Below are positions 17,473 through 54,400 of a stretch of DNA of 64,000 nt, in pieces (the first letter of the stretch is position 1; each line of letters begins with the position of its first letter). A model generated the notes under the pieces. The model ran no database searches. It was not told the DNA's origin and saw only the letters and a program-made list of their open reading frames with translations. Location of the stretch: the NCBI RefSeq assembly GCF_006345805.1, contig NC_043000.1, positions 163,246,001 through 163,310,000 on the forward strand. The letters are read 5' to 3'. The stretch is from Octopus sinensis. Taxonomy: Eukaryota. The translations under genes were made by a program, and so were the position numbers.

Positions 17473-17569
17473 ATATAATATATATATATAGAAAGATAGA
17501 TAGATAGATAGAGAAAGAGAGAGCTATGTATATTATGTTTGGAAGTAAGCATGTCATTGCTTGTGTTGC

Positions 17570-18400
17570 TCTGAATGTTTTAACCTAAACGAAGGAAAAA
17601 TTGAGCTGATGCATTTTGGAAGAATGTCTATGCTAAAACAGCCAGGGGAATCACTCACAGAATCTAATGATATCAGAAACCTAGGAATAATTGTTGAGAA
17701 CAATCTCAGCTGGAGTGCCCACATCAACAGTAAGGTCGATATAGCTTTTAGGATGAGCTCCTGGTTCCTAAGAACCTTTCGGTCCTGAGAACAAGGTGTT
17801 ATCATTCCTCTTTTCTCCTCCTTTGTACGGCTTTACCTTGAATATTGCTGCCCCCAGTGATCTCCCCTTACAAAACAAAACATTTCGAAAACTGAATCTC
17901 CCCAGAGGTCATTCACTAAAAGAATTAAGGGCATGACTGATCTCGATTATTGGGACCGCCTGAAAGCATTGAAACTATTCTCTCCAGCACTGCCGTGAGC
18001 AATACATCCTTTGCACGATGTGGAGAATATACCACCAGCATTACCCAAACGACCTCAACATCAGTTTCAAAATTCATCCAATTAGGACCATGGGCCATAC
18101 GTCTCCTACCCATTTCATGATTACAACATATAAATACACCGCAAGACAATTTCTTTTCCTCACCTGACCTATTTAACATTGTCCAGAAACAGATCAAAGA
18201 GGAAAAGGATCCAATTACTTTTAAACTGAATCTGGACAAATTTCTTCAATGAATACCAGATAAGCCATCAATACCTAGATACAACTCTCTCAGCAAGAAC
18301 TCCCTAATCGAATGGACCATGAAACCACAAAAGCATTTAGCTAATCCTATCAGGTGGCGTTATTAAGTTAGACTTGGCCAGAACCAGTTTTTAGTCGAAA
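17570..18400 (+). mobile_element. CR1/L2-group LINE, 3' part of RT ORF, degenerate
   Basis: LNEGKIELMHFG...IRNLGIIVENNLSWSAHIN...FVRLYLEYCCPQ*SP...QRSFTKRIKGMTDLDYWDRLKALKLFSLQ. Preceded by a (TA)n tract. Confidence 0.85.
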
Positions 18401-30447: not shown

Positions 30448-31317
30448 TGTAACGAAATGTGTGTTTGTGTGTGTGTGTGTCTCTGTGTGTAAATATATGC
30501 ATGTAAGTAATTATGTATAATATGTGTGCGAGTGTAGAGACGTCTGTCCGCGACATCAAATTGATTGTGAGATATTGTGATTGTGGAGTTCCTAGCTGAT
30601 GTCTCTTATAAGGAAATGCTTCACAAAGAGAAAATTAATACAGTGAAGAATATATATATGTGTGCACGTGTGTGTGAGTCTCTGTGTGTGCTGTTTTTGT
30701 TATTGTTATTATCATCATCATCATCATCATAATTTGACTGCCAATTTCCCGTTTTTATTAGTCAATCATCTGTACAAAGGAAATCCATCAAACTAGAATA
30801 ACACTATTTGAACCAGAATCTGTGAGATTAATGATATCCAAAACGTAGTCTAATCACATTTCCTTATCTTATGTGCATTTCCACAGTGGTTGTAATATGT
30901 TATTAGTGAAACGATATCACACTTAGTTTTGATTAGTTTAATTTGTTAAATCTGTATTGGTAAAAGTCATTAGTAAATGTCTCATATCTCTTTACTTTAG
31001 TAACATAGACCATCATAGCCATCCGAATAGTCAGGGCTCTGGTATATTTACCAAAGGATCGACAATTGTTATTTAATCTATTGTTTTGTAATATGACCAT
31101 AACAAAGACATTTGTTATAATTGTTTTTACTGTCTTTTACATGGGTGCCATGAGTGGCACATCTCAATCATACTCATTTATACACATAACTCGTTCAAAT
31201 AGCATCACTCATTATCGAACAGCAATTTTTAATTGAAAATGCCAATAAAAGTGACGCTAAAATCACCTGTTTACCTGTCTATATTTTATTATATACATAA
31301 TTCTTTTCTATTTCTAG

Positions 31318-32660
31318 GTGAAGTCAATGGAGATGCCATGTTCTTCTTCAACCTATCAGCAATCAAAAAATCAGAAAAGGTTCTCCGAGCCGAAGTTCAT
31401 TTATACAAGAGAAAATCTCGCCCTTGGATGCCCAACGGATCAAAATTACAAATTCTATTACATGAAATTGGTCCGAACTATATTAGCAAGACAGGACGTG
31501 TGACTCTGCATCGTGCCAGCCATGGATGGCAATGGCGAGATGTTACCAATTCCGTTCTTAGTTGCCTCGCAACCTCCCGCAAATATCCTCATCTATTTGC
31601 AATAAACTTTCAAACGAAAAAGTCAGGGGGTAAAACACGTACAGTTGCACTCAAGAAATTTTCTATTCATCACTCTAGGCCCTTTCTTATTGTTTATTCT
31701 AACGAAACTGAAGTGGTCAAACTTGACCAGCTTGACAAATTGGCCGAGCGCCTTAAATTATTCTTACCGGGTCAGAACCGAGATAGAAGGCCTGCAAACC
31801 GTACTTCATTGGCAACCAAGTTAGTTCCGTCTACGTCTGGTTCGGATGACTTTTTACCGCCCTTGGATAGAAGCAAAAACAGCACTCGACTTGTACATCA
31901 TATCGCACACGGAATTGGTCCTAAAATGAGAATAGTACTTGACGAAATCGATCCCTTTCACTCGGTTGCTATAGAGAAACTAAACGAAACTACAGAAAAG
32001 CGACATAAAACAAGTGTACCGGTGAAAAAGATTAAAGACAAGAAAGAGTTTCAACGCCGGAAATATGAACAAGATTTTATACCAAACCAGGAAATAGTCA
32101 CAGCTTCACCGTCGTACGAAATTATGGATAATACAACGATGGAACCCGAGTTAGAAAATACAACCGACAGTGAAACAGAAGAGGTAGAAGCAGCCTCGTT
32201 AGCGTTTTCGGATGATTCCAGCATTACGGTGGACGCCAGTCAGACAAACCGATCGAAACGGTCGGTTTTGACTAATGAAATACCCCAAGAACCCGTCGAC
32301 TACAGAACAGTTACGAAATATAATATGCTTAATATTAATCCCGGGGTATTACAGCCACGCCAACGACCGAAGCAGAAGAAGATGTCTCGTCTCATTCCTT
32401 ACCCAAAGGATTCACAGCATAAAAAGAAAAGGCGCAAAAGAAAAAGGATTCGACGAGAAAAAGCCCAACGACGCCGACTTCGCTTTCCGAAGAATTGGAA
32501 AAACACAGACAGAAAGAATTTCCACAAGGAAGATAATTTGTGTAAAAAACACAAATTGCACGTTAATCTGGATGATATTGGATGGAGAGATTGGATAATA
32601 AGTCCTCAATGGTTAAATGCGCATTACTGCGCAGGAAATTGCCCTTTCCCATTGGCAGAG
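31318..32660 (+). CDS. BMP3: Internal coding exon of a BMP3/GDF10-like TGF-beta ligand: most of the prodomain, furin sites and N-terminal half of the cystine knot
   Basis: Open frame inside ORF 31233-32780, bounded by acceptor ttcttttctatttctag|G (phase 1) and donor GAG|gtgagt (phase 0). It starts with FFFNLSAIKKSEKVLRAEVHLY (TGF-beta propeptide) and contains RSKR-SVLTNEIP (cf. BMP3 KKRS...NNELP). It ends with CKKHKLHVNLDDIGWRDWIISPQWLNAHYCAGNCPFPLAE (cf. BMP3 [40 protein letters not shown]). Both intron positions match the vertebrate BMP3 exon 2 layout as I recall it. ADMP or another BMP is less likely but not excluded. Confidence 0.85.
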
Positions 32661-33750
32661 GTGAGTTGTGATTCTCGTTTTTTGTTTGTTTGTTGTTTTT
32701 GTTGTACTTTTTCCTTTTGTTATATTGTTTTCACATTTCACAATATTCCTTGCTTGTTTTCGTTCGGATTACGTTCATGAAGAGTGCAGAACAAAGAGTT
32801 GGAAATGGTAAAAGCAGCTCTTCCCAGCTCAGTATGAATGATAGCTAATATATTCAATTGTGGTTCATTTGGGAAAGGTCAATCTATATTAATTAATAAC
32901 TAACTATTTGTAATACGACCTGGTGTTATATATTCTAACAATTTCTACGTTATAGCTTCATATTTTGTTTATATTGATATTAACATATTACATTAGTGGC
33001 AGACCAAAAACTATCACTAAGATGGTTCTATCAGGATTTGAATTTAGTAAAGAGACATAATAAAATTTAAGGCAATGTACGGAGACAATTGTGTGAACAG
33101 AAATGATTATGAAGTGTATACATCGGAATAAGACCACGTGACTCACTTACACACTGGGCCTGAGAACATTCTATGGAGAGTCGAAATCACAATAGTCTAT
33201 TAGGTGATCAAGTACTTACAGCCATACTTGACGTGTGACTCTTCGCATTCACTGTTATCTTAACTCAATGCTAGATGTTTAAAAAAAAAACTCAAAAGGT
33301 TCTATTCTTCATTGAGAGTATGAGTGTGTACAAACGTACGCACACATTCACACACATGAATGCAACTCATAAATACACGCACGAACGCACACAGACACAC
33401 ACACAGACACAGACACACACACACACACAGAGGCAGACAGACAAATATCCAGGCTATACATATTCATACATACATATGGACTAGTGCTAACCTGCTACCT
33501 TTAAGATAACTTTTTATTACTGACATTGATTTTTATTCAGAGATTGTGTAGTGTATATTTTTAGTTGGAAGAGGGTGAATAGTGTAATACATCAATCTGA
33601 GAAAGTAAATGACAAAAGAAGGGTTCAGAAATACTGAGAGGATTCTGCACTGGCTGGAAAATTTTGCGGTTGTCCTTGTTGAAACGCAAGGTCAACTGAG
33701 ATACAGCAGACTGATGATGAAAGGTTTTATATGTTGTTTACGCTTGAATA

Positions 33751-41776: not shown

Positions 41777-43329
41777 TGTGCACTTTTTATCTTGCCCAAG
41801 GTGCCACGCAATGGGACTGGACCCGGAACCATGTGGTTGGGAAGCAAGCTTCTTTACCGCCCAGTCATGCCTACATACATACATACATACATACGTACGT
41901 ACATACATACATACATACATACATTAAATGCTTGTGTCTTATTTTTTCTCAGCTTTTCCTTGTCTTTCTGTGGCCACCTCACCAAACGCAGACGCCTGTT
42001 TCGTCTTAAATCTTTTAAATCGTTGCTGGATATCAGATGATACACAACGATAAAAGTAATAATAACAATAATAATTATAAGTTTCGCTTTTGTTTACTTT
42101 AAAACAAATTTATACCTACTCGCCCCCCATTAAAATCAAATACAGAAAAACGGAGATATACCGAATTATAATTTTTAAAAAAAGATCTTAGAATAAGATA
42201 AATAAATATACAAGCATTATATGAATGAAAATAAATAAGGAATAAATGGCAATTGGTTACCCCACCACCCCTTCCCGTCGCCGACTTCCACGTCTGAAAT
42301 AATTATATGCCATTATTTGTACGCGACAAAATGTCTCCCACCAAATATTGGTGTGGCGGCACCGACACTAGATGGGACTTAGTGAAGTATGGAGAGAGGG
42401 AGAAAGAGAGAGATCTGGAGTGCAGAAGAGAATGTTGGAGAAAGAAGAAGAGGAGGAGGGGGATAAAGGCGAAGAAGAAGGAAATAGAGGATATAAAATA
42501 GGTGGATACTGAAGTGAATATATTGACGAATAATAATAATAATAATAATAATAAGAAGAAGAAGAAGAAGAAGAGAAGAAGAAGAAGAAAGTGGTAGGAG
42601 ACGAAAGAGAGAAGAAATTAGGAAGATGGAATAGAAAAGAAAGAAGATGTTGAAGCAGCAAAACATGAACGGAGCAGAAAACAGAAATAAAGAAAAACGT
42701 GAACGAGAATAAAAAACAATGAAATACGAAGCAAATAACAAGTGCAACATTTTGCCTTCCAAAGATGTCGGTCTCCTTCCGACTGCTGTTGGTATTCTAC
42801 AAGGCATATCATTGGCCATTACCATAGTATTGGACACATACACTGGGGTGCATCTACTACTACTACTACTACTACTACTTACAAAAGTACCTTAGACTCC
42901 ATTACGAAAACCGTTTTATTGATTGGAAAATCTTGATACACCAACATGCAACGACCACATAATATTGGTTTCAAAATTTTGCCACAAGGCCAGCAGTTTT
43001 GGTGTAAAGTCGATTACATTGACCCCTGTGCTCAGCTGGTACTTATTTTATCAACCTCGAAAGGATTAAAGGCAAAGTCGATCTCAGCGGAATTTAGACT
43101 CAGAACGTAAGGACGGACGGAATGCCTTTAAGCACTTTTATTCGGTCTGCTAACGATTCTGCTGGCTCGCCGCCTTACCTGAAACCGTATATTAACGTTC
43201 TGTTCACACCCTCTTTCTCTTTTTTCTGTTTCTATTCGAACAATTTTGTTCTAAACAAGCACGTTGTGTCATAGAGGTACCTTTCTTCTTTTCTCCTTTA
43301 CCCCTACAAAAAAATCTATAAATTCTTTT

Positions 43330-43955
43330 TTCTTCTACCACCAAACTGAAATTATGCTAGTTCTATGGAGGCCATTTGTACTCAGCCATCTGGACTACTG
43401 CCCTCAACTATGGTCATCCTACTGTGTGAGTGTTACACCAGGAAGTTTGCATCAATGGAACAGATGAGCTACTGGGAGAAACTGAAAGAGCAACGATTCT
43501 ACTCTCTGGAGCGAAGACGGGAGAGGTATGCAATGATATGCAACTGGAAGATCCTGGAGGGGCTGACACCAAACTTTGGTATTGATAGCTATACTAGCCC
43601 CTGAACTGAACATCACTGCACTGTTCCAAAGGTCCCAGCTATCCCATCTACAGTGAGGACCATGTACGGCAATAGCTTGGGATTCATGGGCCCACAGCTA
43701 TTTAATGCCTTGCCAAATTACCAGAGTGATCTTCATGGTATAGGGGTACTTGTTTTCAAGAAACAACTTGACCTCCTGCTATCCAAGGTCGCAAATGGAC
43801 CTAAATCACGGCAAGAAACTCAAAAGAGGGTAGCAGTGTCGAACTCACTTCTTTAACAAAAGCCAATAGCATAAGATTGGCTATTGAAAAGTAATTACAC
43901 CGGCAGTGCTCCAGCATGGCCACAGCCTTCGGGCTGAAATGTGTAAAAGAATAAA
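43330..43955 (+). mobile_element. CR1/L2-group LINE 3' end (second family), internally deleted, with intact 3' tail
   Basis: LWRPFVLSHLDYCPQLWS; YTRKFASMEQMSYWEKLKEQRFYSLERRRERYAMICNWKILEGL; GPQLFNALP. The tail has a CAGCC-TTCG-GGCTG stem-loop followed by AAAAGAATAAA. Confidence 0.85.
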
Positions 43956-45581: not shown

Positions 45582-45997
45582 TTCAAACTCACTTAGACTC
45601 TTAGAACAAATAGACGTGTTGGCACACCAAGATATTTGTCTCCAAGATACCAATTTCTGACACACTTGACCCCTCTGTGTCTCTTCATTCCCACACATTC
45701 ATAACAAGATGGGTTCACCAGCACCGAATGTTTTGTGTGCCGTATGAAGTTCTTGTATGTGTGTATGCCTACAGGAATATATATGTGCGTGTGTATGTGT
45801 GAGAATATTTATGTACGTGCTTGTGTGAATCTACACGGCTGAGATTACATACACTCACGCACACACGCACACACACACACACGCACACACGCACTCATAT
45901 GTATGTTAAAACTTATCCCTCCTGTGCTGTCTTTTTTTGTTTTTATTCATTCCATCTAATATATATATATACATATACATACATACATACATACATG

Positions 45998-46082
<85 letters not shown>

Positions 46083-46504
46083 TATACATACATGCATTTA
46101 TACATACACAAACACACACACACACACACACACACATATGTATACCCCATATATATAATATACACACGTGTGTGTGTGTGTGTTCTCTACAGTACATACA
46201 GCATCCTGTACGCAGCGAACTTCCCCCTACGCGACTTCGGGGTCGTTCATCCATTAAAAACAGGTCCGTTTCTCTGTCCCACACTCACCCATGTCCCCAC
46301 CCTACCTTCACACACTTCACCCACCAATGAGTGTGCCTCAAACCAATATGTTTTCTTGCTTTCTTAACTAGCGTATCTTTCGGTATAAGCCCACCTACCA
46401 CCCATCTCCAGCACGCATGCACATACACACATATACAAGCAGACGGTGCTAGGCATTTTTCTAACACTACCTTACACTTTTAAACCACTCTTCTACCTCG
46501 TTTA

Positions 46505-48611: not shown

Positions 48612-48721
48612 ATAGAAAAAATATATATATACATATATATATATATATACTACATATATATACAAATATGTATATTAGCTGTATATATATATACACACAC
48701 ATATATATATATACACATATA

Positions 48722-48784
<63 letters not shown>

Positions 48785-48823
48785 TATATATATATTATAT
48801 ATAAATATATATATATATAGTAA

Positions 48824-52244: not shown

Positions 52245-52367
<123 letters not shown>

Positions 52368-52498
52368 TTAGCAATTAAGGACAACTACTTAATAAGGAAA
52401 ACTTAACAAGAAATTGTCAGGTAGATAGCGTGAAAACCTCATAAGAGAAAAAATTTCGAAAATAATTATTTCTTATTGAACATATTAATTTATATATA

Positions 52499-52897
52499 GA
52501 GGGCATTATACATCCATGCCAGATGGCATTATACATACATGCCACACGCTAAGAGGGACATTTAGTCATTTCTACCAAAAATATTACTAATCCCACCGAA
52601 TGCAATTTTTCAAAGTAAGACATTTAAAAAATATAGACCTGTATCACAGTGATTTCATACTTACGTATTCATCAGCAGGCCTGGATGTATCATACATAAA
52701 CGACCCTGCCTCGCTTAAGCCGATCAGCTAACTGATCAACATCAACGAAGCACATGGGTGAGTTTACATATATTACATCCTGTAAATGTCGGACTTTTAC
52801 GAATTGCATTTCGGGAAAGGAAAAGTTTTTTCGGAATAAAAATTTAGCGTGTGGCATGTATGTATAATGCCATCTGGCATGGATGTATAATGCCCTC
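52499..52897 (-). mobile_element. Hammerhead-containing insert with perfect 54-bp terminal inverted repeats in TA repeats
   Basis: 52499-52552 is the exact reverse complement of 52844-52897, and each arm has an internal ~23-bp direct repeat. TA/(TA)n lies on both sides and the hammerhead is at 52635-52682. Confidence 0.7.
52635..52682 (-). ncRNA. Type I hammerhead ribozyme motif, intact core
   Basis: Minus strand: AGGCCTG [CTGATGA] ATAC-GTAA-GTAT [GAAA] TCAC-T-GTGA [TA] CAGGTCT. Helix I is 7 bp, helix II has a GNRA loop, and the AUA site lies between 52642 and 52641. Confidence 0.85.
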
Positions 52898-52950
<53 letters not shown>

Positions 52951-53473: not shown

Positions 53474-53475
<2 letters not shown>

Positions 53476-53558
<83 letters not shown>

Positions 53559-53559
53559 G

Positions 53560-53593
<34 letters not shown>

Positions 53594-53627
53594 TGTTATT
53601 GTTATTATTATATTATTATTATTATCA

Positions 53628-53692
<65 letters not shown>

Positions 53693-53700
53693 CAACATTA
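53476..53700 (+). repeat. (ATT)n microsatellite
   Basis: Direct reading. Also at 10023-10096 and 57238-57333 (with ACT repeats). Confidence 0.95.
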
Positions 53701-53701
53701 T

Positions 53702-54400
53702 TAAGGCGGCGAGCTGGTAGAATCGTTAGCACGCCGGGCGAAATGCTTAGCGGTATTTCGTCTATCACTACGTTCTGAGTTCAAATTCCGCCGGGGTCGA
53801 CTTTGCCTTTCATCCTTTCTGGGTCAATAAATTAAGTACCCGTCTAGTACTGGGATCATTGTGATCGATTGTACCCCTCCTCACAAAGATCCTTGTGCCT
53901 ATAGTGGAAAGGATTGTTATTATCATTATTGAGTCGATAAATTAACTACCAGTTATGCGCTGGGGTGGATGTAGTCGACCGATCCCCTCCCCCAAAATTC
54001 CAGTCTTGTGCCTATATTAGAAAGGATTATGATGATTATTAAGGCGGTGAACTGGTGGAATAGCTACCGCGCCGAGGAAAATGTTTAGCGACATTTCTTC
54101 CGACTTTATATTTTCAGTTCAAAGTCGGCCGAAGCTGACTTTGCCTTTCATCCTTTCGGGGTCAATGGTATAATTAACAGTTGACTGCCGGGGTGGATGA
54201 TATCGACTTATCTCCTCCCCCCAAATTTGAAATCATTATTATTATTGATACGAAAGCAGAGAACTGACGTAATTGTTAGTACACCGAATTTTGTCGGTCC
54301 TTGTTCTGAGTTCAAATTCTGCCGATAAGTACCTGATTAGCACTGGGGTCGGCGTTATGAACTTCTCCACCAGTCAAAAGTGTAGGCCTTGTGCCAGAAT
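53702..54400 (+). mobile_element. Head-to-tail cluster of about four SINE family B copies
   Basis: Copies at about 53702-53915, 53930-54030 (3' half), 54041-54236 and 54250-54400, separated by short (ATT)n runs. Confidence 0.8.

What the first reader, a model, noticed from the sequence alone, without database searches (positions are those of the whole stretch)
52499..52897. Textbook hammerhead inside a 399-bp element with perfect 54-bp terminal inverted repeats
Seen: all core residues (CUGAUGA, GAAA, UA), a 7-bp helix I, a 4-bp helix II with a GUAA GNRA loop, and helix III AUCAC-U-GUGAU. The enclosing element has zero-mismatch 54-bp IRs with an internal ~23-bp direct repeat and TA at both ends, so it looks like a Tc1/mariner MITE. 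Inference: either a PLE pLTR with an inverted terminal duplication or a genuine DNA MITE carrying a ribozyme, which would be unusual. The GAGGGACATT right after the left arm resembles the GAGGGCATT terminus, suggesting a microhomology template switch. Perfect IRs imply a young event.
Basis: partly seen in the sequence, partly recalled or inferred. Interest (0 to 1): 0.85.

Follow-up and report, generated by a model that had tools for sequence, protein, structure and literature searches.

The report
Octopus hammerhead retroelement with inverted ends
A 399-bp non-coding mobile element in an octopus genome carries a complete self-cutting hammerhead RNA motif and perfect inverted ends; it most likely is a small ribozyme-bearing retroelement copied in by Penelope-like machinery, a known kind, rather than a ribozyme-carrying DNA transposon.

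Summary
At 52499-52897 there is a 399-bp element with zero-mismatch 54-bp inverted arms, each made of two 23-nt subrepeats. It sits inside a (TA)n tract. On the minus strand (52682->52635) lies a complete type I hammerhead with a cut site at 52642/52641. A motif this good is expected about 6e-6 times per window by chance.

The host is Octopus vulgaris/sinensis. Beyond the arms, the 291-nt interior is itself a long imperfect hairpin (z = -8.6), and the hammerhead is a clean side branch on it. Helix III is unstable alone but forms a double hammerhead in a dimer.

My best reading is a monomeric, retrozyme-like non-autonomous retroelement inserted by Penelope-like (PLE) target-primed reverse transcription on both DNA strands. 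The left arm would be the native 3' tail, and the right arm a 54-nt inverted 5'-truncated twin copy. This geometry, the (TA)n target and the ribozyme all match published PLE and retrozyme features.

A true MITE is not excluded. I could not retrieve any other copy with the available collections, so the decisive copy census remains undone.

Verdict: new member of a known kind, of moderate interest.

The parts
52491..52498 (.). Left flank TATATATA. It is the remnant of the (TA)n target and a possible target-site duplication of 2-8 bp.
   Evidence: the same 8 nt lie at 52898-52905, and identity is lost beyond 8 nt
52499..52552 (-). Left arm. On the ribozyme-sense (minus) strand it is the 3' terminal 54 nt, UUAGCGUG...AAUGCCCUC. 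It holds two 23-nt subrepeats, each a GGCAU-N9-AUGCC hairpin. I infer it to be the native 3' tail and the reverse-transcription start region.
   Evidence: the role is inferred from PLE geometry (PMC8557442, PMC11167929)
52553..52567 (-). Unpaired 15-nt linker GACUAAAUGUCCCUC. It ends in a near-copy of the terminal motif AAUGCCCUC, and its 3' end (52553) lies 89 nt downstream of the cut site.
52568..52626 (-). Distal 3' half of the interior hairpin (rod). It pairs with 52783-52843.
52627..52634 (-). 8-nt single-stranded spacer AUAUUUUU between hammerhead helix I and the rod.
52635..52682 (-). Type I hammerhead ribozyme motif, 48 nt. Predicted cleavage is after A17 (52642), between 52642 and 52641. 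It forms a side branch of the rod.
52683..52727 (-). Proximal 3' half of the rod. It pairs with 52732-52780. Positions 52678-52693 resemble the terminal subrepeat in inverted orientation (14/16).
52728..52731 (-). Terminal loop of the rod.
52732..52843 (-). 5' half of the rod. Position 52843 is the inferred 5' end of the main copy.
52844..52897 (+). Right arm, a perfect inverted copy of the 54-nt 3' tail. I infer it to be a second, 5'-truncated cDNA primed from the opposite target strand.
   Evidence: the role is inferred (PMC8557442 fig. 2 legend; PMC11167929)
52898..52946 (.). (TA)25 microsatellite, the target tract on the right.

Best explanation
This is a single (monomeric) copy of a small non-coding, hammerhead-bearing retroelement of the metazoan 'non-LTR retrozyme' / Penelope-like-element (PLE) dependent kind, in an Octopus vulgaris/sinensis genome.

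Shown here:
- a complete type I hammerhead on the minus strand
- an interior that folds as a long imperfect rod, with the ribozyme as a branch
- a helix III that is stable only between two molecules
- insertion in a (TA)n tract
- perfect 54-bp inverted ends

Inferred mechanism:
1. An RNA of about 345 nt served as template. It consisted of the rod plus a 3' tail with two small hairpins, running 52843->52499 on the minus strand.
2. A PLE reverse transcriptase/GIY-YIG endonuclease cut both strands of the (TA)n target.
3. Each 3'-OH primed cDNA synthesis from the same RNA 3' position (...AAUGCCCUC).
4. One cDNA ran the full length. The other stopped after 54 nt.
5. Joining the two left the 54-nt tail at both ends in inverted orientation.

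The perfect arms are therefore a by-product of integration, not transposase-binding sites.

The hammerhead would cut multimeric or paired transcripts. This single copy cannot release a unit-length RNA or a circle by itself, because it has only one cut site.
For: Hammerhead is real.
- All core nucleotides and three helices are present.
- The chance expectation is about 6e-6 per window.

Retrozyme-like body.
- The size is 345-399 nt and GC is 38%, inside the published 170-400 nt and <50% GC ranges (PMC7229834).
- The interior without the perfect arms folds at -102.7 kcal/mol, z = -8.6. As a circle, 71% of it is paired.
- The sense strand folds better than the antisense strand (-102.7 vs -76.5 kcal/mol), and G.U pairs number 11 vs 4.
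- The ribozyme is a clean 56-nt branch opposite only 2 nt of the other rod arm. That fits an RNA organised around the ribozyme, not a DNA palindrome that picked one up.

Hammerhead type and dimer behaviour.
- It is the canonical metazoan type I kind with a weak, near-palindromic helix III.
- Helix III as a hairpin gives -0.2 kcal/mol; as a duplex it gives -12.1.
- The dimer MFE is -32.7 against 2 x -12.9 for monomers, and it draws the double hammerhead (PMC4209133).

PLE signature.
- An inverted 5'-truncated copy adjacent to the 5' end that gives flanking inverted repeats, a (TA)n/AT-rich target bias, and hammerheads are all published PLE features (PMC8557442).
- A purified PLE protein cleaves and extends both target strands and starts reverse transcription about 85-120 nt downstream of the hammerhead cut (PMC11167929). 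Here the cut lies 89 nt from the linker motif and 143 nt from the end.
- Only this orientation attaches both cDNA 5' ends to flanking 3'-OH groups.

Host and element class.
- The host has 31 recently active Penelope-like families (PMC13282606).
- Animal retrozymes are reported to be PLE derivatives and often occur as monomers (bioRxiv 10.64898/2026.07.22.740005).
- The element has no poly(A) or tRNA part, so it is not a LINE-type SINE.
Against: - There is only one copy in hand. No homologue was found in any collection I could search, so family behaviour is unknown: variable 5' ends, variable inverted copies, tandem arrays.
- No similarity to an octopus PLE pLTR could be tested.
- Retrozymes are defined by tandem repeats and circRNA, and neither is seen here.
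- Several features are equally typical of MITEs and foldback elements: long perfect terminal inverted repeats with two direct subrepeats, a recurrence of the subrepeat motif inside the element, a whole-length hairpin, and TA-type flanks.
- The G.U asymmetry is weak (about p = 0.06-0.09).
- Rfam hammerhead models do not score the motif.
- A10.1-U11.1 departs from the conserved G-C.
- Cleavage is untested.
Confidence: 0.55

Rival explanations
1. It is a genuine DNA-transposon MITE or foldback element that carries a hammerhead as passenger sequence. The 54-bp terminal inverted repeats, with two 23-bp subrepeats, would be transposase-binding sites. The element would move by cut-and-paste into TA or (TA)n, with Tc1/mariner-like TA or hAT-like 8-bp target duplication. 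The ribozyme would have been captured from a retrozyme or PLE.
For: - The terminal inverted repeats are perfect and long, with internal direct repeats.
- The flanks are compatible with a TA or an 8-bp TATATATA duplication.
- The whole element is a hairpin.
- The subrepeat motif recurs inside the element in inverted orientation, as subterminal repeats do in some DNA transposons.
- O. vulgaris has many active Tc1-mariner, hAT and MITE families (PMC13282606).
Against: - No paper in the held library links a hammerhead to a MITE or DNA transposon.
- The ribozyme is intact and sits as an exact branch of the rod, opposite only 2 nt of the other arm. No capture mechanism explains that.
- The termini GAGGGC... 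do not look like Tc1/mariner/pogo CAG-type ends (from memory, not tested).
- The interior is only about 70-77% self-complementary while the arms are perfect. The arms and the interior therefore differ in origin or age.
- The TA flank is a microsatellite, so the TSD argument is empty.
Confidence: 0.2
2. It is a retrozyme-type family whose RNA itself contains both arms. The unit would be 399 nt and the arms would form the closed end of the rod. The genomic copy would be one exact unit, opened at the tip of the rod because reverse transcription starts and ends in that terminal stem-loop. On this reading the 'terminal inverted repeats' are simply the rod seen in DNA.
For: - The arms stack directly on the interior rod, apart from a 15-nt bulge.
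- The 399-nt circle folds at -197 kcal/mol with 78% of bases paired.
- The PLE reverse transcriptase is reported to initiate inside a stem-loop (PMC11167929).
Against: - A perfect 54-bp duplex next to a 70-77% paired interior is an odd gradient for one evolving RNA.
- Long perfect dsRNA is generally avoided in viroid-like RNAs. This rests on established knowledge and was not tested here.
- The model requires exactly one round of copying, with start and stop at the symmetry centre.
Confidence: 0.12
3. It is a local rearrangement or an assembly artefact. The inverted 54-bp duplication would have arisen by replication template switching at the microsatellite, or by a mis-assembly. The hammerhead-like motif would be a decaying relic with no activity.
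For: - The locus lies between long AT microsatellites, which are fragile and hard to assemble.
- The microhomology GAGGGACATT / GAGGGCATT lies at the inner edge of the left arm.
- Rfam hammerhead models report no match to the motif.
Against: - The ends of the palindrome coincide exactly with the TA-repeat boundary on both sides, as expected for an insertion.
- The ribozyme core is fully intact, with three helices.
- The interior rod is highly non-random.
- Fold-back read artefacts usually give kilobase-scale palindromes. This is established knowledge and was not tested here.
Confidence: 0.05

Closest known systems
Metazoan non-LTR retrozymes (Cervera & de la Pena 2020, PMC7229834; review PMC7761336)
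   Same: - non-coding, 170-400 nt, GC <50%
- canonical type I hammerhead
- highly self-paired predicted RNA
- found in molluscs (mussel units are 350-390 bp)
- co-occur with PLEs
- monomeric copies are known (bioRxiv 10.64898/2026.07.22.740005)
   Different: - Retrozymes are described as head-to-tail tandem repeats expressed as circRNA. Here there is a single unit with one cut site.
- This unit is flanked by perfect inverted ends, a feature the retrozyme papers I read do not mention.
- No expression or circle data exist for it.
- I found no paper in the held library that reports one in a cephalopod.
Penelope-like element insertions: pLTR with hammerhead plus an inverted 5'-truncated copy (Craig et al. 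2021, PMC8557442; Frangieh et al. 2024, PMC11167929)
   Same: - an inverted copy abutting the 5' end, which gives inverted repeats around the unit
- (TA)n / AT-rich target
- hammerhead upstream of the reverse-transcription start by about 90-140 nt
- both target strands usable as primers
   Different: - There is no RT/GIY-YIG ORF, so at best it is a non-autonomous derivative.
- The hammerhead is canonical, not the PLE minimal type.
- No 30-40-bp one-sided 'tail' is identifiable.
- Homology to an octopus PLE is untested.
MITEs / foldback DNA transposons (for example Tc1/mariner- or hAT-derived)
   Same: - about 400 bp and non-coding
- long perfect terminal inverted repeats with direct subrepeats
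- TA-type flanks
- hairpin potential over the whole length
   Different: - It carries a complete ribozyme placed as a structural branch.
- The termini are not of the CAG type (from memory).
- The TSD is unreadable.
- No transposase partner is known.
- The interior complementarity favours one strand as RNA.
Dimer-dependent type I hammerheads of newt satellite 2, Schistosoma Sm-alpha and amphibian retrozymes (Forster et al. 1988, cited in PMC4209133; PMC7229834)
   Same: - helix I of 6-7 bp and helix II of 4 bp
- a weak, near-palindromic helix III that is stable only as an intermolecular duplex (double hammerhead)
   Different: - Helix III here is longer: 5+5 bp around a U.U mismatch.
- Loop 2 is a GUAA tetraloop.
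- The 10.1-11.1 pair is A-U.
- The cleavage triplet is AUA.

Membership tests
Hammerhead ribozyme, type I | Conserved core: C3 U4 G5 A6 N7 G8 A9, G12 A13 A14, the A15.1-U16.1 pair, and H17 at the cleavage site | tested here: met
   CUGAUGA 52675-52669, GAAA 52656-52653, U16.1 52643 and A17 52642 on the minus strand
Hammerhead ribozyme, type I | Three helices around the core, with helix I open-ended (type I topology) | tested here: met
   Helix I has 7 bp and is open. Helix II has 4 bp plus a GUAA loop. Helix III has 4 bp plus a triloop, or 5+5 bp in a dimer.
Hammerhead ribozyme, type I | G10.1-C11.1 closing pair of helix II (highly conserved; PMC4209133) | tested here: not met
   A10.1-U11.1 (52668/52657). 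I expect this to lower activity rather than abolish it. That expectation is from memory and was not tested.
Hammerhead ribozyme, type I | Match to curated covariance models (Rfam hammerhead families) | tested here: not met
   No hammerhead family is reported at gathering score or at E<=10, even for the 81-nt stretch alone.
Hammerhead ribozyme, type I | Self-cleavage at the predicted site | not testable with these tools
   This needs in vitro transcription of monomer and dimer constructs.
Metazoan non-LTR retrozyme | Non-coding unit of about 170-400 nt with GC <50% and a type I hammerhead | tested here: met
   The unit is 345 nt (399 nt with both arms) and GC is 38%. It has no ORF longer than 76 aa and no protein homologue.
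Metazoan non-LTR retrozyme | Highly self-paired (rod or branched) predicted RNA | tested here: met
   The interior has z = -8.6. The circular 345-nt fold has z = -9.1 with 71% of bases paired.
Metazoan non-LTR retrozyme | Head-to-tail tandem repeats in the genome | tested here: not met
   This locus holds a single unit, and there is no other copy in 64 kb. The rest of the genome could not be searched.
Metazoan non-LTR retrozyme | Expression as linear and circular RNA | not testable with these tools
   No transcript data are accessible for this element.
Penelope-like element insertion (non-autonomous derivative) | Inverted 5'-truncated copy abutting the 5' end of the sense copy, which gives flanking inverted repeats | tested here: met
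   With the ribozyme sense on the minus strand, the 54-nt inverted copy (52844-52897) lies at the 5' side and both outer ends are the same 3' terminus (PMC8557442). The structure is compatible with this feature, but the feature is not unique to PLEs.
Penelope-like element insertion (non-autonomous derivative) | AT-rich / (TA)n target | tested here: met
   TATATATA | element | (TA)25
Penelope-like element insertion (non-autonomous derivative) | Sequence similarity of the 3' end or ribozyme region to the pLTR of an autonomous PLE in the same genome | not testable with these tools
   No octopus PLE sequence was obtainable. No RT or GIY-YIG domain matched among the sampled window ORFs.
Penelope-like element insertion (non-autonomous derivative) | PLE-type minimal hammerhead: an extra nucleotide between A9 and 10.1, a 6-bp helix II and almost no helix III | tested here: not met
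   There is no extra nucleotide, helix II has 4 bp, and helix III is present (PMC4209133).
Tc1/mariner-type MITE | TA target-site duplication that can be demonstrated | tested here: inconclusive
   The flanks are TA repeats, so any even length from 0 to 8 bp fits.
Tc1/mariner-type MITE | Terminal inverted repeats shared with an autonomous transposase-encoding element, and many copies with constant ends | not testable with these tools
   No other copy and no partner element were retrievable.

The most novel reading that the evidence does not exclude
The element is a true cut-and-paste MITE, or a hybrid family, whose terminal inverted repeats are constant in all copies and which carries an active hammerhead. 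In that case a DNA transposon would be spreading a self-cleaving ribozyme. Alternatively, a retrozyme lineage may have converted into, or be mobilised as, a terminal-inverted-repeat element. A related possibility is that repeated PLE twin-copy events build the rod layer by layer, with the perfect outer arms as the youngest layer.
Probability: 0.2. Interest if true: 0.75.

Novelty: new member of a known kind. Interest (0 to 1): 0.4.

Why it matters
If the best reading is right, this adds cephalopods to the animals that hold hammerhead-bearing, PLE-dependent small retroelements. It also gives a very clean, young, single-copy example of the two-strand (twin) priming that purified PLE protein shows in vitro. 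Both junctions and both reverse-transcription start points can be read to the base, so the copy could help define how PLEs start cDNA synthesis and why their insertions carry inverted repeats.

There is also a practical warning. Monomeric retrozyme or PLE insertions of this shape will be called MITEs by structure-based annotation tools.

If instead it is a real MITE with a ribozyme, that would be a new association between DNA transposons and self-cleaving RNA.

Tried and rejected
Searches for homologous copies, all negative:
- blastn of the element against the window found only itself.
- A six-frame pseudo-protein of the element against the 5.8-billion-cluster protein database gave no hit. The idea was to catch ORFs called on octopus contigs.
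- Exact or degenerate DNA patterns for the hammerhead and the arm gave nothing real: viral contigs gave 0 and one chance hit L001; metagenome contigs gave 0 in two scans; prokaryotic genome contigs gave 0 in two scans.

Attempts to sample more octopus DNA:
- The O. vulgaris BMP3-like protein P0021 is not on record for contig look-up.
- Two window ORFs are not on record either.
- LINE fragments from the window retrieved only short ENA/Logan contigs.
- Only an Argonauta hians locus (L003, 90 kb) was obtained. My one pattern, tied to this element's CAGG helix-I strand, gave a single match there that I judged to be chance because it has no helix II. L003 was not compared directly with the element, because it was not readable from Python.

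Other negatives:
- Rfam gave nothing relevant. Its microRNA hits are the TA repeat, and the OTKONC hit at 13.6 bits is noise.
- Pfam on a sample of window ORFs found only the TGF-beta gene.
- tRNA and bacterial promoter scans were irrelevant or negative.

Ideas rejected or downgraded:
In that case the second cDNA's 5' end would be internal and not attached to a primer.
- A third, degenerate subrepeat in the linker. It did not reach my alignment threshold.
- A LINE-dependent SINE. There is no poly(A) or simple-repeat tail of its own, and no tRNA or 5S head.

Full report
**What is there.**

- The two arms, 52499-52552 and 52844-52897, are 100% complementary. The repeat finder reports 63 nt only because the flanking TA repeat is its own complement.
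- Each arm consists of two tandem 23-nt subrepeats matching at 21/23. Each subrepeat contains a small hairpin, GGCAU-N9-AUGCC.
- The element is bounded by TATATATA on the left (52491-52498) and (TA)25 on the right (52898-52946). It therefore sits inside a (TA)n tract.
- Because of that tract, a target-site duplication of 0, 2, 4, 6 or 8 bp is equally possible, and more than 8 bp is not.
- A second microsatellite, (AT)60, lies 133 bp further left.
- No other copy of the element or its arms exists in the 64-kb window.

**The hammerhead.** The minus strand reads, from 52682 to 52635: AGGCCUG / CUGAUGA / AUAC-GUAA-GUAU / GAAA / UCAC-U-GUGA / UA / CAGGUCU.

- All conserved core positions are present: C3-A9, G12-A14, the A15.1-U16.1 pair and H17 = A.
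- Helix I has 7 bp (one G.U) and is open, which makes it type I. Helix II has 4 bp with a GUAA loop.
- Cleavage is predicted between 52642 and 52641.
- A descriptor I wrote finds this as the only hit on both strands of the window. In 300 Markov shuffles of the window it found 0.017 loose hits per window and none with helices as long as observed.
- An analytic estimate gives 6e-6 per window and about 0.25 per 2.7-Gb genome. The motif is therefore a hammerhead by descent, not by chance.

Three reservations apply:
- Rfam's hammerhead models do not report it, at gathering score or at E<=10.
- The 10.1-11.1 pair is A-U instead of the highly conserved G-C (PMC4209133).
- Helix III cannot close on a 1-nt loop, so as a monomer it is 4 bp plus a triloop, worth only -0.2 kcal/mol.

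Two molecules, by contrast, form a 5+5-bp intermolecular helix III worth -12.1 kcal/mol. The dimer minimum-energy structure (-32.7 against 2 x -12.9 kcal/mol) is exactly the double hammerhead. This is the weak, near-palindromic helix III of canonical metazoan type I hammerheads that act as dimers. It is not the PLE 'minimal' variant, which has an extra nucleotide after A9 and a 6-bp helix II (PMC4209133).

**The body of the element.** The whole 399 nt folds as one hairpin (-206 kcal/mol, z = -23), which is trivial given the arms. The 291-nt interior alone, without the arms, is the informative part.

- It is also a long imperfect hairpin. On the ribozyme-sense strand it folds at -102.7 kcal/mol, z = -8.6. 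On the other strand it folds at -76.5 kcal/mol, z = -5.3.
- It has 11 G.U pairs on the sense strand and 4 on the antisense strand. This points the right way for an RNA-level structure but is not significant.
- Positions 52843-52732 pair with 52727-52683 and 52626-52568.
- The hammerhead plus an 8-nt spacer (52682-52627) is a clean side branch opposite only 2 nt of the other arm.
- A 15-nt unpaired linker (52567-52553, ending AAUGUCCCUC) separates the rod from the left arm.
- Folded as a circle, the 345-nt unit has 71% of its bases paired, z = -9.1. GC is 38%.
- No ORF exceeds 76 aa, and a six-frame search of the element found no protein relative.

**Host.** A BMP3-like exon at 31233-32780 differs by one residue in 447 from Octopus vulgaris CAI9720588.1, and Argonauta hians is 71% identical. 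The window therefore comes from the O. vulgaris/sinensis complex.

A recent repeat annotation of O. vulgaris lists 31 recently active Penelope-like families. It also lists many Tc1-mariner, hAT and MITE families (PMC13282606). Both candidate machineries are thus present in this genome.

**Most likely mechanism.** Published features of Penelope-like elements fit the anatomy point by point.

[quoted passage not shown] They also show an insertion bias for (TA)n, and canonical PLEs have hammerheads in their pLTRs (PMC8557442).
- A purified PLE protein cleaves and extends both strands of the target. It prefers AT-rich DNA and starts reverse transcription at internal stem-loop sites roughly 85-120 nt downstream of the hammerhead cut (PMC11167929).
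- Metazoan type I hammerheads are mostly housed in non-coding 170-400-nt 'non-LTR retrozymes' with highly self-paired RNAs, including 350-390-bp units in a mollusc (PMC7229834).
- These retrozymes are now argued to be non-autonomous PLE derivatives that often occur as monomers (bioRxiv 10.64898/2026.07.22.740005).

With the ribozyme on the minus strand, I infer the following steps:
1. The template RNA ran 52843->52499: the rod, the linker, then a 54-nt 3' tail with two small hairpins.
2. One cDNA was primed from the left (TA)n 3'-OH and copied all 345 nt.
3. A second cDNA was primed from the opposite strand on the right. It started at the same RNA position and stopped after 54 nt.

Both outer ends are then the complement of ...AAUGCCCUC-3', which is what is seen. 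The cut site lies 89 nt from the internal near-copy of that motif and 143 nt from the end.

The steps from 'template RNA' onward are inference. The sequence anatomy and the folding are shown.

**Age.** Zero differences between two 54-nt arms, with the octopus TE clock of JC 0.09 for 25 My (PMC13282606), gives a 95% upper bound of about 7.7 My. The insertion is young but not necessarily very recent. The interior complementarity (about 70-77%) must be a family feature and cannot come from the same event.

**Rivals.**
- A true MITE or foldback element remains possible. I give it about 0.2. In its favour are the long perfect terminal inverted repeats with two direct subrepeats, the TA-type flanks, the whole-length hairpin, and a recurrence of the subrepeat motif inside the element: + strand 52678-52693 matches at 14/16 and overlaps helix I. 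Against it are the intact ribozyme placed as an exact branch, the absence of any reported hammerhead-MITE association in the held literature, and termini that do not resemble the Tc1/mariner ends I recall.
- A retrozyme whose RNA contains both arms, with the copy opened at the rod tip, is a variant I give about 0.12.
- A local rearrangement or assembly artefact is unlikely, at about 0.05.

**What could not be done.** The decisive test is a census of other copies, and it was not possible. The available DNA collections are viral, metagenomic or prokaryotic, and they gave nothing. Octopus contigs could not be reached through protein look-ups. Only a 90-kb Argonauta locus was obtained. My one pattern, tied to this element's CAGG helix-I strand, gave a single match there that I judged to be chance. 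That locus was not compared with the element directly.

**Verdict.** The element is best filed as a new member of a known kind, a retrozyme-like, PLE-type hammerhead retroelement in an octopus. A 20% chance remains that it is something less ordinary. Interest is moderate.

Noticed in passing
window 31233-32780 (+): Large exon of a BMP3-like TGF-beta family gene (Pfam TGF_beta and TGFb_propeptide). It differs by 1 residue in 447 from Octopus vulgaris CAI9720588.1, which identifies the host as the O. vulgaris/sinensis complex. The ORF reads through into an intron after ...PFPLAE.
   Followed up: yes
window 17549-18300 (+) and 43255-43853 (+): Frameshifted fragments that look like the C-terminal part of a LINE ORF2 (motifs such as ...YSLERRRERY...KILEG...). 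Pfam reported no domain in them. The only relatives found were on short ENA/Logan contigs.
   Followed up: partly
window 52678-52693 (+): GGCCTGGATGTATCAT matches the terminal 23-nt subrepeat at 14/16 in inverted orientation and overlaps the 5' strand of hammerhead helix I. The 3' tail could therefore pair with and mask helix I. Alternatively this is a subterminal repeat of the kind seen in DNA transposons. My rough corrected p is about 0.02. Unexplained.
   Followed up: partly
window 52366-52490: A roughly 125-bp unique stretch lies between (AT)60 (52245-52364) and the TATATATA that precedes the element. It shows no similarity to the element beyond a 9-nt AAATTTAGC. It may be an older insertion into a once-longer TA tract.
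   Followed up: partly
whole window, e.g. 48621-48819, 52245-52364, 53475-53703, 45959-46090: The density of microsatellites is extreme: (AT)n up to 100 units, (ATT)76, and (CA)n/(TG)n. Most long ORFs in the window are translations of these repeats.
   Followed up: no
window 52620-52700 (-): A weak partial Rfam match to 'OTKONC RNA' (13.6 bits against a gathering score of 141) lies over the hammerhead helix II region. I take it as noise.
   Followed up: no
L003 (Argonauta hians BAAFZT010000053.1, 8604257-8694734): The orthologous BMP3-like gene model spans 70 kb and yields an 895-aa product, longer than the 505-517-aa octopus proteins. It may be a fused gene model. One pattern tied to this element's helix I gave a single match in the 90 kb, which I judged to be chance; the locus was not compared with the element directly.
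   Followed up: partly
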